Source: Podarcis filfolensis (taxonomy: Eukaryota). Taken from it: a stretch of DNA of 64,000 nucleotides. The first letter of the stretch is position 1; every line of letters begins with the position of its first letter. Made by a program: the position numbers and the translations under genes. Below, piece by piece: positions 11,442 to 16,814 of this stretch. The notes beneath the pieces were generated by a model. It was not told the origin of the DNA, made no database searches, and saw nothing but the letters and a program-made list of their open reading frames with translations. The stretch lies in the NCBI GenBank assembly GCA_964270895.1, contig OZ185439.1; one strand, 5' to 3'.

Positions 11442-11798
11442 TTAGTATTACTACTAATAATAATAACAAATGTGAAAACATAAAAGCAATTCACCATTAA
11501 AACACACAGTGGCATTAAAACATCCCTAATTAAGGCAATGAAACAAAGAATCAAAAAGCATAACAATTAAAACCGCTTTCAAAGGTTAAAAGAACAAAAC
11601 CAAAAGTCCAGTTTAGGGGAATGGTTGCCTAAACAGGTGTGTCTTCAGGACCCGGCAGCATGCCAATACTGATGGGGCTTCTCATATTTTGGCAGGGAGA
11701 GCCTTTCACAACACTGGCGCCACAGTGAGAAAGCCTGCCTCTGAGTTACCATAAGCCGATAATCATCAGGCTGTGGCTGATGTTCATACTGTACTGCC

Positions 11799-12270
11799 TG
11801 TTGATATCAAGCCTTGTCATTCAGAGGCATTTGGCACTCTCCAGGTGCCCGGCTTGATTCCTTGTTGGCCTCCCCCGTCAGCGACTCCCGGCAAGACAAG
11901 GCGAGGTCTTTATCGGCCGATCCTTCTTCAAACGTGAGAAGAACACAGCCACTCCTCCTCCCTCACTCCCTGCCATCCCCAGGGAGGGGAAAGAGACAGA
12001 CAGAAATGTATTTACATGCCTTTATTTCTGTCTTTCCTCAGTGCAGAGAACAACATGTCTGCACTCTCTGATACCCAGCTGCAGAGTGAGAAATAACTCC
12101 ACCCATGTACTTCCAGTACAGGGTCATGTGACACTCTGAGCTAACATCCGGTGCTCAGTGCACATAATAGACTGTTCCTTGTTCCCACGGTACAGTCCCA
12201 AAACATCAACATCCTGTTTGGCTTTCCAGCCATCTGGAGCACTCAGCAGCATTGCTCCTTTTTCGTAACA
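11799..12270 (-). repeat. 3' LTR of Copia-type element (472 bp)
   Basis: Direct repeat of 14831-15302, preceded on minus by the PPT; AATAAA on minus at 12021-12026. Confidence 0.95.
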
Positions 12271-14130
12271 ACCTCCCCCAAAAGAATCAATGCGTGTTGC
12301 GGCAAGCAAAGCGTGATCCAGAGAAGAAAACAAACAGTTGTTATACACATAACACTCCCCTGTTGTTTCAGTTCCACCCTTGGAACTACCCGCCACTGGT
12401 TTCCCCAGTGTACCTCTCTGGTTGTCTGGCTTCCAAGGAATGAGTGCATCTGCATTACCTTGGCTAGCAACTCTCTGTTGTGTCTTTGTCTCTGACTTAG
12501 ACACAGCTCCAACCTGTCCTCGGTTGTGTACAACAGCAACACATGCAACAGCTAAGTTAGCATACTCTTCTGAGTACCTTTTGGGTGGTTCACCCTTTGT
12601 GACTCTCACAGACCTGCGTATGAGGTGCTGATCCTCTCTGCTCACTGGTTCTGTCTCAGGACTCCTAGGAGAACCAGTTCCAACAGTAAACAGTGGTTCA
12701 ACCTTCACCTGTGAAGGTCTATCCATTGTGTGAGATTTCCTCTCAATGACTGTGACAACAGAGCTCTCTGAGCTATCACTGTCGCTCTCAGTACCACTGT
12801 ACTCTGTGAAATCATCATCATCATCTGAATCGTCCTCTGTGGGAAATGTGTGTGCTATCACTCTCTCCTTTTCAGGAGCATTCTCTAGAAATTTTGTGAG
12901 AATCACCTGACCAGATTCAGACAAAATTACTCTGTAGAGACCCTTTTCATATCCCACAAAAATGCCTCTGGCATTCTTTACTCCACCTGGAGCTTCTGTC
13001 CTCACATGAGACCCAAAAACCTTGAAATGGGCAACAGAAGGTTTTCTCTGGAACAGTTTCTCAAAAGGAGAACTTCCCAACTCTTTCGAAACCTTTCTTA
13101 CCCACGCATAACTAAACGACATGAGTGACTCCGCCCAGAACTCATGTGGCAGATGTGAACTAAGCAATTGCGCATTCATTCCCTTTTGCAATTCTTTGTT
13201 CACTTTTACACAAACACCCCTGTTCCACGCTTCCGCTGAAACAGCAATCTTGTGTCTGATCCCCTTCTTCTGCAGGAACCTCTGGAAATCCTGTAAAAGA
13301 AAAATCTGCTTCTCATCTGTCAAAAGACAATCAATGTTAGCATCATGCATGTCTTTAACCTTGTCACAAAACTCTTGAAACCTTTCCAAGGCTTCCTGTG
13401 GTTTCTTTAACACATAAACCCAGACAAAGTTAGAGAAATGATCCACACACACAAGATAAAATCTTGCATTGCCTCTAGATGGTTCTAGAGGACCAATCAC
13501 ATCAGCATACACCCGCTGAAACGCTCTGTCGACCCTGGCCACCTTCTTGGCGCTCGTTTTGGTCACACCTGCAAGAGAAATCATGTTAGACTCAGAATTA
13601 CATTCCATGTAATCACTTTGGTCAAAAGTCAACAAATACAGTCCATCTTTCTGTCTGGCAGAAAGATATAACTCTCCATCTTTGAAGATCTCGCAGCTCT
13701 TATCATCATAGGACAGTCTCAGTCCTTTCTTTGCAATCTGCGAAACACTCAGCAGATTGAACTTCAGTTCAGGAACCAAGTAAACATTGTGTATTGTCAA
13801 GTTCAGACTCTTAAGATAGACAGTGCCAACCCTGGTCGCTTCCAGCTTCTGACCGTTGGCTTGTTCCACAGCGAAGCTTTGCTTCTTAAACGTCGAAAAG
13901 AGTCCTCTGTGCGGGGACATATGAAAATTACAGCCCGTATCGATTACAAAAGAGTGTCCAACATCTGGCGTGGTTCCTTTCGCCATCAGGGCCTTTGCAG
14001 GTTTCACCGAAGACTTGGTATGACCTTTGCCTGCTGCCTCAGGCTTTGCTGAGCGGCCCTTCGCTCCTTTCGGCTGGCGTGGCTTCTTGCAGTTCCGCTG
14101 AAGATGCCCAGTCTGTCCGCAATTGTAGCA
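12124..14130 (-). CDS. Copia-type polyprotein ORF: CCHC knuckle, aspartic protease, degenerate integrase + SH3-like domain, acidic tail; no RT/RNase H (first ATG at 13986)
   Basis: CYNCGQTGHLQRNC (14089-14130, in frame upstream of the tracked ORF); FVIDTGCNFHM; NVYLVPELKFNLLSV; VYADVIGP; LLTDEK; FKVFGSH...GIFVGYE..YRV; IRRSVRVTKGEPPKRY. No YxDD motif. Confidence 0.88.
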   Translation of the reverse strand, partial: CYNCGQTGHLQRNCKKPRQPKGAKGRSAKPEAAGKGHTKSSVKPAKALMAKGTTPDVGHSFVIDTGCNFHMSPHRGLFSTFKKQSFAVEQANGQKLEATRVGTVYLKSLNLTIHNVYLVPELKFNLLSVSQIAKKGLRLSYDDKSCEIFKDGELYLSARQKDGLYLLTFDQSDYMECNSESNMISLAGVTKTSAKKVARVDRAFQRVYADVIGPLEPSRGNARFYLVCVDHFSNFVWVYVLKKPQEALERFQEFCDKVKDMHDANIDCLLTDEKQIFLLQDFQRFLQKKGIRHKIAVSAEAWNRGVCVKVNKELQKGMNAQLLSSHLPHEFWAESLMSFSYAWVRKVSKELGSSPFEKLFQRKPSVAHFKVFGSHVRTEAPGGVKNARGIFVGYEKGLYRVILSESGQVILTKFLENAPEKERVIAHTFPTEDDSDDDDDFTEYSGTESDSDSSESSVVTVIERKSHTMDRPSQVKVEPLFTVGTGSPRSPETEPVSREDQHLIRRSVRVTKGEPPKRYSEEYANLAVACVAVVHNRGQVGAVSKSETKTQQRVASQGNADALIPWKPDNQRGTLGKPVAGSSKGGTETTGECYVYNNCLFSSLDHALLAATRIDSFGGGCYEKGAMLLSAPDGWKAKQDVDVLGLYRGNKEQSIMCTEHRMLAQSVT
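12271..12279 (-). promoter_or_regulatory. Polypurine tract
   Basis: GGGGGAGGT directly abutting the TG of the 3' LTR. Confidence 0.85.
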
Positions 14131-14818
14131 TCAGACAACGTTCAAAGCTACAGCATCCTCTCCAGTAGCAACATCAGTGGGGGAATTAGAACTCCGTTCT
14201 TTCCCTCCCCCTGTCCTTCACTTCCAGTGCAGCATGCCGGCTGTGTTCATCCTGAACCACGGCACTCAGGGGCACTCCCCCCTTCTTGGCATCCATGCTG
14301 AATCCAAGCCTCAGCTCTCCACTCTCGAGCTAGTTAAAATCCAAAAGCTCCTTTTGAGCTGTCTTTCTGCCTGTCTCTCAGGCAGGCAATCTCCAAGCTG
14401 TCTCAAAGTCAAAACAACTTTCGCTTTCCCGGCTCTGACTGAGCCAGCCCCAGGTGTCAGTAGTTTTCCACTGGCCTGACTGTCGTTGCTTAGCAACTGT
14501 GCATACCTCTCATCCTTATCTCGCCGCAAGAATTTCTGGTATGCAAGCCTTTACTCTCAGAGCTGTTTTTTTTTTTCAAACGCAGCTCTCGTGAACCAGA
14601 GAATAAATCAATCTGCATTCACACTTTTAGCCCGATATTCAGCATACCTTTTTGGGGCTCCGTTGCTTGGAAAACACCCCCTCTTGGGGCCAGCCGTCTG
14701 TTCAGCTTCTGGCTGCAATTGCAGACGTTATCTTCTTTCCTTGGTGCAGAGGATGGCACACGATTCATCAACCTCTCACCTCTCATGCTGATTCCCATGG
14801 ATCAGATAACCAGCAGCG

Positions 14819-14828
14819 TCTGCTACCA
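14819..14828 (-). promoter_or_regulatory. Primer-binding site complementary to initiator tRNA-Met 3' end
   Basis: TGGTAGCAGA 2 nt after the 5' LTR; complements ...UCUGCUACCA of vertebrate tRNA-iMet (recalled sequence), the usual Copia primer. Confidence 0.85.
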
Positions 14829-14830
14829 TA

Positions 14831-15302
14831 TGTTGATATCAAGCCTTGTCATTCAGAGGCATTTGGCACTCTCCAGGTGCCCGGCTTGATTCCTTGTTGG
14901 CCTCCCCCGTCAGCGACTCCCGGCAAGACAAGGCGAGGTCTTTATCGGCCGATCCTTCTTCAAACGTGAGAAGAACACAGCCACTCCTCCTCCCTCACTC
15001 CCTGCCATCCCCAGGGAGGGGAAAGAGACAGACAGAAATGTATTTACATGCCTTTATTTCTGTCTTTCCTCAGTGCAGAGAACAACATGTCTGCACTCTC
15101 TGATACCCAGCTGCAGAGTGAGAAATAACTCCACCCATGTACTTCCAGTACAGGGTCATGTGACACTCTGAGCTAACATCCGGTGCTCAGTGCACATAAT
15201 AGACTGTTCCTTGTTCCCACGGTACAGTCCCAAAACATCAACATCCTGTTTGGCTTTCCAGCCATCTGGAGCACTCAGCAGCATTGCTCCTTTTTCGTAA
15301 CA
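14831..15302 (-). repeat. 5' LTR of Copia-type element (472 bp)
   Basis: TGTTAC...TCAACA on minus; no difference from 11799-12270 found by eye; ORF-track peptides at 11814 and 14846 are identical. Confidence 0.95.
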
Positions 15303-16814
15303 CTGCCCTTAGTGACCAGTGAAATTGGTTGAATATGGGGCTTATCTGCACTTACCTTCCATCCGCTCTTTCTAGGCACGGTCCCCAATTTAAACCTCCT
15401 TCCATTTTTGCTCTGGAGCTTTCTTCAAGAAAACCCACTCTTTTGAGCTCCTTCAAAGCAAACAGCAATCCATGGAACCCCAAATTGGTGTTGGCTCCGA
15501 CTGAGCACTAAAGTGCAGGGTTTTGTGAGGAAATCTCTAAGGCAAGGTGCGGGGCGGGATGCTCCGACATTGAGTTTTCTTTTTTTTACTATTTTTACCA
15601 TCACAGGGTATAAGGTGAAATATACAGTAGATTTCCAGGCCTTGGCAACTGCTTACAGGCTTCATCAATGCTTCCACAGGCACTTAGGAGGAGAAGCATT
15701 ATGAAGACCATCTGACGTCTCAGTTTTTCCTCCTAAACACTCACGTATCTGGATCTATCTTGTAGACACTATGCCTTCTGGACATTCCCAAAGACGATTT
15801 GTGTCCTGTTCTCCAGGCGTTCCCAATTAAATTTCCACAGATCAGGCCGGCTCCATATTCTTTTGGAAAATTAAGAGTTTTCACTTAGAGCACAAGGTAG
15901 TCCTAATCAAACCTGAGGCTGCCTTGGGCTTGCCTCCCAAGCATAATGCCCCCTTTTTAATGAGCTCTGGATTTCGTCTGAGCAATGTTTTGAATATCAT
16001 CACCAGCCATTTCTGTGAAGCGTTCTATCAAACATGGCTTCCCAACTCTTCGCAGGTCCCTGCACAGAGGGTGGGTGCTGACCGCCTCATAAAGAACTCC
16101 TACGCTTTCCTTAACAATGGAAAGCTGGAAAAAGTTAAAGTTAAAATATGCCGTTCTTGTTAAGGACCATTCTAGCGCTGGGAATGAATTAAATTGCGGA
16201 AACGGCCTCAAATCCTGGCGGGTGAACTGTCCCATTCTGTAGATGAAAGTTCAAGGCTTCATTGTCCTTCATGGGGATGCGGCTGAGATCCATGAGGGGA
16301 AATGGCACATGAGGGAACATGCCGAGCCATTGAGGCACCATTAGATACCTTTCTCTATTCTCGCCCACAGCGCTATCATTTCACTTAAAAAAAAAAAGTA
16401 TGAAAAACCCCAATGCAGAATTTCATATTAGCCACCTAAGCTAAAATGGCCTACAGACATTTTACTTCATGGAGGGATCAGAACATTAGCTTTTCCATCA
16501 TCAAAGAGAAGGGACACATTTTCAATTATACTAAAACATACAAAGTGATATTTCAAGGAAGGATGAGGAAAACAGGGCTCGATGTCATCCTCACTCAAAC
16601 AAAGACATGGTGACAAGCCTGCTTGCTGTTTTCTTATGCTTTTCATACTTTTCGTTTCTAAAGTTGTAAACTTCCTCGGACACCTTCAAACAGGCTTCGC
16701 CAACAGAGTGCCCTCTGCCCCAGCCAGCATGGCCCAAGGGTCAGGGATGGCTGGAGACATGGTTCGGAATATACGAAGGGCACCATATTAGCGAAGGTAG
16801 CTTTAACAAGGGGC

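What the first reader, a model, noticed from the sequence alone, without database searches (positions are those of the whole stretch)
11794..15307. Very recent Copia-type LTR element with no RT or RNase H that still keeps a ~620-codon ORF
Seen: two 472-bp LTRs with no difference found by eye, a perfect CTGCC TSD, iMet PBS and PPT, but only 2560 bp of internal sequence. The ORF runs protease, integrase remnant, acidic tail, then straight to the PPT, with no YxDD or RNase H motif. Established: Copia elements are essentially missing from mammals and birds and are uncommon in amniotes. Non-autonomous LTR elements (TRIM/LARD types) usually lose coding capacity. Inference: this is an actively mobilised, protein-coding parasite of an autonomous lizard Copia family. 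An open ORF of this length in an RT-less element suggests the product is under selection.
Basis: partly seen in the sequence, partly recalled or inferred. Interest (0 to 1): 0.85.

Follow-up and report, generated by a model that had tools for sequence, protein, structure and literature searches.

The report
RT-less Copia element, young insertion
This is a very recent insertion of an old, high-copy lizard jumping-gene family that lost its reverse transcriptase yet keeps a protease and a catalytically dead integrase under selection; this copy's own gene is broken.

Summary
On the minus strand lies a 3,504-bp Ty1/Copia-type element with two identical 472-bp LTRs, a CTGCC duplication, a tRNA-iMet primer site, a polypurine tract and 2,560 bp of internal sequence. 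No reverse transcriptase (RT) or RNase H remains in any frame.

It is not a one-off deletion. The same RT-less layout occurs in a Podarcis lilfordi copy (81% nt), a young Zootoca vivipara element with an intact 869-aa ORF (41% aa, end to end), and a third lineage in Logan contigs. These form one clade, whose sister group includes autonomous Podarcis Copia.

dN/dS between the window ORF and the P. lilfordi copy is 0.34 (CI 0.27-0.43). It is lowest over the protease and the integrase-like fold. That fold lacks the zinc domain and the catalytic Glu in all three lacertid sequences.

Contigs of two other samples carry the empty site. Family depth is orders of magnitude above the flank depth.

This copy is a defective passenger. 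Its capsid domain is deleted, and a frameshift and a private stop cut the 668-codon frame from the gag start. The partner that supplies RT was not identified.

First readers of this scan flagged at least seven sibling copies elsewhere in this genome.

The parts
11794..11798 (.). Target-site duplication CTGCC (left copy)
   Evidence: Empty-site contigs hold a single copy.
11799..12270 (-). 3' LTR in the element's sense, 472 bp, identical to the other LTR
12272..12283 (-). Polypurine tract TTTTGGGGGAGG, lying inside the open frame
12127..14130 (-). 668-codon open frame (stop at 12124-12126): zinc knuckle, protease, integrase-like fold, acidic linker, tail. The last 49 codons lie in the LTR.
14089..14130 (-). 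Gag zinc knuckle (CX2CX4HX4C)
13723..13950 (-). Copia protease beta-barrel with the D-T-G motif kept
   Evidence: Pfam PF22936, 6e-18. Alignment.
12895..13527 (-). Integrase-like core plus SH3-like domain. The upstream HHCC zinc domain is missing, the catalytic Glu is Val, and other invariant residues are lost.
   Evidence: The model has pLDDT 91.8 and best matches retroviral two-domain integrases.
12616..12870 (-). Acidic Asp/Ser-rich linker
12271..12615 (-). RRSxR...PPKRY motif, which in autonomous Copia precedes RT, followed by a tail conserved with Zootoca. RT and RNase H are absent here.
14131..14133 (-). In-frame stop just before the zinc knuckle, private to this copy
   Evidence: All family contigs of four runs differ at 14133.
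14195..14205 (-). Frameshift between the gag start and the long frame. A 1-nt length difference here is common among family contigs.
14265..14296 (-). Gag ATG (14296) and the junction of an in-frame capsid deletion of about 500 nt (about 14265-14275)
   Evidence: A contig of run X4 spans the junction (record 29).
14819..14828 (-). Primer-binding site TGGTAGCAGA, complementary to the 3' end of tRNA-iMet
   Evidence: The tRNA sequence is from memory. It is consistent with the 18-nt Zootoca site and the 30-nt site of L010.
14831..15302 (-). 5' LTR in the element's sense, 472 bp
15303..15307 (.). Target-site duplication CTGCC (right copy)

Best explanation
The element is a very young insertion of a member of an old, high-copy Ty1/Copia-derived family of lacertid lizards. 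The family has no reverse transcriptase (RT) or RNase H.

The family is semi-autonomous. Its intact members encode one polyprotein: Gag (with or without the capsid domain), zinc knuckle, protease, a catalytically dead integrase fold, an acidic linker and a tail. This polyprotein is kept by purifying selection.

Inferred: RT/RNase H and an active integrase come in trans from autonomous Copia elements of the same genome. All of these elements are built around tRNA-iMet priming.

Inferred: the family's own protein gives its RNA an advantage inside the partner's particles. The likeliest route is its nucleic-acid-binding knuckle and protease, plus an integrase-shaped scaffold with an acidic C-terminal region that engages the partner's RT or integrase.

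Shown: the copy in this window is a passenger. It has lost the capsid domain, carries a frameshift and a private stop, and cannot make the family protein from its gag start. It was nevertheless copied and inserted recently.
For: Anatomy:
- Identical LTRs, target-site duplication, primer site and polypurine tract.

Recency:
- 0 differences in 472 bp between the LTRs.
- Empty-site contigs in runs X1 and X2, from two samples and two studies.

Family, not accident:
- A colinear RT-less P. lilfordi copy at 81% nt.
- A Zootoca element with 290-bp LTRs (1 mismatch), an 18-nt iMet primer site and an intact 869-aa ORF. It aligns end to end at 41% identity, including the tail.
- A third lineage with four intact 845-aa variants in four runs and a circular 3.7-kb unitig.
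- No RT/RNase H remnant in any of them.
- The four RT-less sequences form a clade (SH-aLRT 99). Its sister group includes autonomous Podarcis Copia.

Selection:
- dN/dS is 0.34 (bootstrap 0.27-0.43) over 612 codons. By region: protease 0.24, integrase-like core 0.25, SH3-like domain 0.16.
- dN/dS is 0.25 against a second fragment.
- 16 of the 32 variant sites that read laying displayed inside the ORF are synonymous.

Dead integrase:
- The HHCC domain is absent and the catalytic Glu is Val in all three lacertid sequences. All 37 autonomous sequences and the third lineage keep Glu.
- The fold is still integrase-like.

Abundance:
- 5,878 and 1,776 contigs at 90% identity or more.
- Summed depth is about 3e5 against a flank contig depth of 82 in X1, and about 1.8e4 against 14 in X2.

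Possible partners:
- Young full-length autonomous Copia elements in P. lilfordi.
- An active Copia insertion in corn snake (PMC4657000).

Precedent:
- Ty1 RT needs C-terminal integrase residues for activity (PMC3103432, citing Wilhelm et al. 2000).
Against: - No partner was identified. The two autonomous Podarcis families found use the internal (copia-type) iMet primer site and are only about 24-30% identical in protease-integrase.
- Translation of the family ORF was not shown. The one possible RNA run (X15) is only guessed to be RNA.
- dN/dS rests on two Podarcis-type comparisons. The Zootoca comparison is saturated at synonymous sites.
- Depth sums from contigs are not copy numbers.
- The run organisms are coded, and the empty-site flanks differ from the window by about 1%. 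The absence may therefore be between close species rather than a polymorphism.
- The structure model leans on an alignment made mostly of intact integrases.
Confidence: 0.8

Rival explanations
1. One-off internal deletion. A normal autonomous Copia copy lost RT and RNase H once, at or after this insertion, and all its siblings are full length.
For: Only one copy lies in the window. Internal deletions of LTR elements are common.
Against: The same layout is colinear in a P. lilfordi copy at 81% nt, in Zootoca at 41% aa and in a third lineage. The nearest autonomous proteins are at most about 30% identical. Thousands of family contigs cover the whole internal part, including the region spanning the RT-less junction.
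Confidence: 0.02
2. Non-coding parasite. The family is mobilised purely in trans, like LARD or TRIM elements. Its frames are open only because the copies are young, and the product has no role.
For: This copy was mobilised despite a broken gene and a missing capsid domain. The P. lilfordi copy also has gag frameshifts. The protein is therefore not needed in cis.
Against: Frames of 668 and 869 codons stay open at 59% amino-acid divergence. dN/dS is 0.34 with an upper bound of 0.43 and 0.25 on a second pair. Half of the displayed within-family variant sites in the ORF are synonymous. Constraint is concentrated on the folded domains.
Confidence: 0.1
3. Repeated regeneration. RT-less copies arise again and again from an autonomous master, for example by reverse transcription of a spliced Gag-PR-IN RNA. 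The ORF would then be conserved only because the master is.
For: Drosophila copia makes a spliced subgenomic RNA (from memory). The breakpoint sits at the same linker motif in all three lineages.
Against: An autonomous master cannot carry the shared dead integrase, with no HHCC domain and Glu replaced by Val. The RT-less sequences form their own clade with long branches. The lacertid RT-less elements have a different primer-site type from the autonomous Podarcis families.
Confidence: 0.05
4. Host-serving product. The dead-integrase polyprotein interferes with autonomous Copia elements (dominant-negative, in the manner of Ty1 p22 or Fv1). It would be kept because it restrains them.
For: Catalytic residues are lost while the fold is under constraint. 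Such proteins can poison multimeric assemblies.
Against: It is carried by a high-copy, polymorphic, mobile element with young LTRs, not by a fixed single-copy locus. Selection acting on the element itself explains the data.
Confidence: 0.03

Closest known systems
RLG_Sabrina / RLG_WHAM of Triticeae (semi-autonomous Gypsy elements mobilised by RLG_Wilma; PMC9744471)
   Same: Old, high-copy LTR families that lack RT and still encode part of the protein set. They co-exist for millions of years with autonomous elements that share almost no sequence with them.
   Different: Those are plant Gypsy elements that lack integrase coding sequence and encode GAG. This is a vertebrate Copia lineage that keeps a protease and an integrase fold without catalytic residues. 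One subfamily has also dropped the capsid domain.
BARE2 of barley (Copia; mentioned in PMC9744471)
   Same: A Copia-type element that lost one function and relies on a sibling family for it.
   Different: BARE2 lacks a working GAG and keeps RT and IN. Here RT/RNase H are gone and Gag-PR is kept.
LARD, TRIM and TR-GAG non-autonomous LTR elements (from memory)
   Same: LTRs, a primer site and a polypurine tract, with mobilisation in trans.
   Different: LARD and TRIM elements have no conserved coding sequence, and TR-GAG elements encode GAG only. This family has a 700-870-aa Gag-PR-IN-like ORF under purifying selection.
Autonomous Copia of Podarcis lilfordi (L009, 5.1 kb, 1,385-aa Gag-Pol; L010) and the Copia insertion in corn snake OCA2 (PMC4657000)
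   Same: Squamate Ty1/Copia elements with young LTRs. L009 also has a 5-bp target duplication. They use tRNA-iMet priming, belong to the sister group on the PR-IN tree and are possible RT donors.
   Different: They carry RT, RNase H, the HHCC domain and the catalytic triad. They use the internal (copia-type) iMet primer site and are only about 24% identical to the window ORF.

Membership tests
Ty1/Copia (Pseudoviridae) LTR retrotransposon | LTRs bounded by TG...CA with a 5-bp target-site duplication | tested here: met
   Sense LTR runs TGTTAC...AACA. The duplication is CTGCC. The empty site was seen in two runs.
Ty1/Copia (Pseudoviridae) LTR retrotransposon | Copia-type Gag-PR-IN domains, with integrase placed before RT | tested here: met
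   Pfam Pol_BBD, rve (weak) and SH3_retrovirus. There are 18,372 Copia-type hits. On the tree the ORF sits among Copia polyproteins.
Ty1/Copia (Pseudoviridae) LTR retrotransposon | Reverse transcriptase (RVT_2) and RNase H encoded by the element | tested here: not met
   None in any frame of the window or of the related loci. It is a derivative of the superfamily, not an autonomous member.
Ty1/Copia (Pseudoviridae) LTR retrotransposon | Primer-binding site for tRNA-iMet | tested here: met
   10 nt in the window and 18 nt in Zootoca match the 3' end of the tRNA as I recall it. No tRNA gene was available in the window for a direct check.
Semi-autonomous LTR retrotransposon (in the sense of PMC9744471) | The whole population lacks RT but keeps some coding sequence | tested here: met
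   Three diverged RT-less lineages have long open frames.
Semi-autonomous LTR retrotransposon (in the sense of PMC9744471) | The retained coding sequence is under purifying selection | tested here: met
   dN/dS is 0.34 (0.27-0.43) and 0.25. This rests on few copies.
Semi-autonomous LTR retrotransposon (in the sense of PMC9744471) | An identified autonomous partner with matching primer site, LTR termini and activity period | tested here: inconclusive
   Two young autonomous Podarcis families were found. Their primer site is the internal iMet type, and their LTR ends match only in the generic TGTT start (in L010 also the ACA end).
LARD / TRIM | No conserved protein-coding capacity in the internal region | tested here: not met
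   A long ORF with dN/dS well below 1.
TR-GAG | GAG is the only ORF | tested here: not met
   Protease and integrase-like domains are present. This copy lacks the capsid part of GAG.

The most novel reading that the evidence does not exclude
The lacertid RT-less lineage keeps a catalytically dead integrase fold and its acidic C-terminal region because that module captures or activates the partner's RT (Ty1 RT needs integrase C-terminal residues), or fills structural places in the partner's integration complex. The family would then be a parasite that brings its own adaptor, protease and nucleic-acid-binding knuckle. It would sit in a layered network with autonomous Copia elements and with a second RT-less lineage that still has an active integrase.
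Probability: 0.25. Interest if true: 0.8.

Novelty: new variant of a known kind. Interest (0 to 1): 0.6.

Why it matters
Non-autonomous LTR elements that keep part of their protein set have been worked out mainly in grasses, where they retain GAG. Here a vertebrate Copia lineage has lived without RT long enough to diverge to 41% amino-acid identity. It has kept a protease and an integrase-shaped domain that can no longer cut DNA, and it is still inserting.

This gives a natural system for two questions: what a retroelement protein is for once catalysis is gone, and how parasites of retroelements secure the enzymes they lack. It also bears on annotation. Gene builds of Podarcis and Zootoca label these ORFs as host proteins or fuse them to host genes (for example FAM168A isoform, or vomeronasal receptor-like). 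The insertion itself may be a useful presence/absence marker.

Tried and rejected
- Searching with the Zootoca protein for further members gave only itself and distant plant Copia.
I therefore had only two Podarcis-type sequences for dN/dS.
- Scan notes gave no autonomous partner.
- Rfam and ARAGORN found nothing relevant in or near the element.
- The tail after the RRSxR motif shows no similarity to RT or RNase H of autonomous Copia. I could not show what it derives from.
- I considered and rejected a domesticated host gene, because the element has LTRs, a target duplication, an empty site elsewhere and high copy number.
- I did not use complex prediction. Homologous integrase cores would probably score as binding whatever the biology.
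- Literature searches found no description of RT-less coding Copia in lizards.
Full report
**1. What is in the sequence**

The element lies on the minus strand. Its LTRs, 11799-12270 and 14831-15302, are 472 bp each and identical at every position. CTGCC flanks both ends.

In sense orientation the LTR runs TGTTAC...ATCAACA. Two bases after the 5' LTR comes TGGTAGCAGA (14819-14828). By my recollection of the vertebrate initiator tRNA, this is the complement of its 3' end. The recollection is supported by the 18-nt version in the Zootoca relative and by a 30-nt complement of the tRNA's 5' half in an autonomous Podarcis element. TTTTGGGGGAGG (12272-12283) abuts the 3' LTR. The internal part is 2,560 bp.

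**2. The open frame**

- Stop to stop it covers 668 codons, 12127-14130.
- In order it contains a gag zinc knuckle, the Copia protease barrel with D-T-G (Pfam 6e-18), an integrase-like core (rve, 22 bits, below threshold), an SH3-like integrase domain, an Asp/Ser-rich linker, and the RRSxR...PPKRY motif that in autonomous Copia leads into RT.
- After that motif come about 110 codons that read through the polypurine tract, and 49 codons inside the LTR.
- tblastn with three autonomous Copia polyproteins finds nothing beyond the integrase anywhere in the window.

**3.

The frame has no gag.

- The gag ATG is at 14296. After about nine codons an in-frame deletion of about 500 nt removes the capsid domain. 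In a P. lilfordi copy that domain is present.
- A frameshift near 14200 and an in-frame stop at 14131-14133 then separate the gag start from the long frame.
- At 14133 every family contig in four runs differs from this copy, so the stop is private to it.
- A contig of run X4 spans the capsid-deletion junction (record 29), so that deletion is a subfamily trait.

**4. Not a one-off deletion**

- The nearest proteins are Podarcis and Zootoca gene models mislabelled as host proteins.
- A P. lilfordi locus (L002) is colinear with the element from gag to the 3' LTR at 81% nt, with no RT.
- A Zootoca locus (L001) holds an element with 290-bp LTRs (one mismatch), an 18-nt iMet primer site and an intact 869-aa ORF. 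That ORF aligns with the window ORF end to end at 41% identity, tail included.
- An exhaustive HMMER search of 1.84 billion representatives finds only these and one more close relative, P0020. All other hits are ordinary Copia at about 35% identity or less and under 200 bits.
- P0020 belongs to a third RT-less lineage. Four intact 845-aa variants occur in four Logan runs. One comes from a circular 3.7-kb unitig (LTR plus internal part), with an intact integrase and no RT.
- On a protease-integrase tree of 74 sequences the four RT-less rows form one clade (SH-aLRT 99). Its sister group (98) includes autonomous Podarcis Copia.

**5. Selection**

| Comparison | Codons | dS | dN | dN/dS |
|---|---|---|---|---|
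| Window ORF vs P. lilfordi ORF (L002), Nei-Gojobori | 612 | 0.44 | 0.15 | 0.34 (bootstrap 0.27-0.43) |
| Window ORF vs second, closer L002 fragment | 125 | 0.196 | 0.049 | 0.25 |

By region in the first comparison:

| Region | dN/dS |
|---|---|
| Protease | 0.24 |
| Integrase-like core | 0.25 |
| SH3-like domain | 0.16 |
| Acidic linker | 0.43 |
| Tail | 0.58 |

- Among the 32 variant sites that read laying displayed inside the ORF, 16 are synonymous. Random change would give roughly a quarter. The displayed sites are a best-supported subset.
- Comparisons with Zootoca are saturated at synonymous sites, but both frames are open at 59% amino-acid divergence.

**6. A dead integrase under constraint**

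- All three lacertid RT-less sequences lack the HHCC zinc domain of about 65 aa.
- They have Val where 37 of 37 autonomous sequences and P0020 have the catalytic Glu.
- Several other invariant residues are replaced, and Zootoca has also lost both Asp.
- The region is nevertheless modelled with pLDDT 91.8 and best matches two-domain retroviral integrases (PFV, RSV). The model leans on an alignment of mostly intact integrases.

**7. Activity and abundance** (all)

- In runs X1 and X2 (two samples, two studies, organism A) one contig each joins 11792 to 15302. That skips 3,509 bases, which is the empty site with a single duplication copy.
- The flanks of these contigs differ from the window by about 1%, and organism names are coded. 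The absence is therefore either a polymorphism or a difference between very close taxa.
- X2 also shows the window's allele at 11740, so it may hold a second haplotype.
- 5,878 (X1) and 1,776 (X2) contigs at 90% identity or more lie on the element.
- Summed depth is about 3e5 against a flank contig depth of 82 in X1, and about 1.8e4 against 14 in X2. These are not copy numbers, but they indicate a family of hundreds to thousands of copies.
- A run guessed to be RNA (X15) covers the internal part but not the flanks. I give this little weight.

**8. The partner**

P. lilfordi has at least two young autonomous Copia families.

| Feature | L009 | L010 |
|---|---|---|
| Size | 5.1 kb | about 4.6 kb |
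| LTRs | 354 bp, one mismatch | about 265 bp, 99% identical |
| Target duplication | GAGCT | not determined |
| Coding | 1,385-aa Gag-Pol | RT and RNase H present, split by a frameshift |

- Both place a complement of the anticodon-side or 5' half of tRNA-iMet (GGTTATGG...) after the LTR, the Drosophila-copia style of priming. The third RT-less lineage does the same.
- The lacertid RT-less elements use the tRNA's 3' end instead.
- All are built around tRNA-iMet, so a shared particle is plausible. By the criteria of PMC9744471 (primer site, LTR termini, timing), however, the partner is not identified.

**9. How it most likely works**

- Shown: the family lacks RT and RNase H, its integrase lacks the catalytic Glu and the zinc domain, its ORF is under purifying selection, and copies are still inserting. 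A copy with a broken gene and no capsid domain was inserted.
- Inferred: RT/RNase H and active integrase come in trans. The family protein is not needed in cis but benefits the lineage.
- Most speculative: the integrase-like fold with its acidic C-terminal region engages the partner's RT or integrase. The precedent is that recombinant Ty1 RT needs C-terminal integrase residues (PMC3103432, citing Wilhelm et al. 2000).

**10. Comparison with known systems**

- The nearest concept is the semi-autonomous Sabrina/WHAM-Wilma system of Triticeae (PMC9744471).
- BARE2, TR-GAG, LARD and TRIM each differ in what is kept.
- Autonomous Copia elements are active in squamates (PMC4657000).
- I found no paper describing RT-less coding Copia in lizards.
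- I class this as a new variant of a known kind.

**11. Earlier scan notes**

First readers flagged at least seven sibling copies elsewhere in this genome. They include a capsid-less one said to have an intact 701-aa ORF and one said to have an apparently dead integrase. I used these as leads only.

Noticed in passing
window 14742-14828 (minus strand): The leader after the primer site carries a sense, CCA-ended piece resembling the 3' end of tRNA-iMet, and a GGTTAT...GATCC stretch resembling the internal primer site of the autonomous Podarcis Copia.
   Followed up: partly
L009:6440-11543 and L010:6578-11195 (P. lilfordi): Two young full-length autonomous Copia families whose primer site complements the 5' half or anticodon side of tRNA-iMet (30 nt in L010), as in Drosophila copia. 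The end of the L009 LTR also holds a sense copy of the tRNA's D-arm region.
   Followed up: partly
L001:6855-6900 (Zootoca): The 3' LTR of the Zootoca element is followed by a second, diverged copy of the primer site and leader. This suggests a tandem or recombinant LTR-internal-LTR-internal arrangement.
   Followed up: no
L004 and L007 (Logan contigs): Both contigs close on themselves with a 30-nt overlap, as unitigs of one LTR plus the internal part. This fits many near-identical copies in those runs. The organism of the runs holding the third RT-less lineage is unknown to me.
   Followed up: partly
proteins P0001, P0003, P0004, P0005: Public gene builds label these element ORFs as host proteins or fuse them to host genes (vomeronasal type-2 receptor 26-like, FAM168A isoform X1).
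   Followed up: no
window 11600-11730: The left flank has contig depth well above that of the unique empty-site contig in X1 and X2, so part of the flank is itself repetitive.
   Followed up: no
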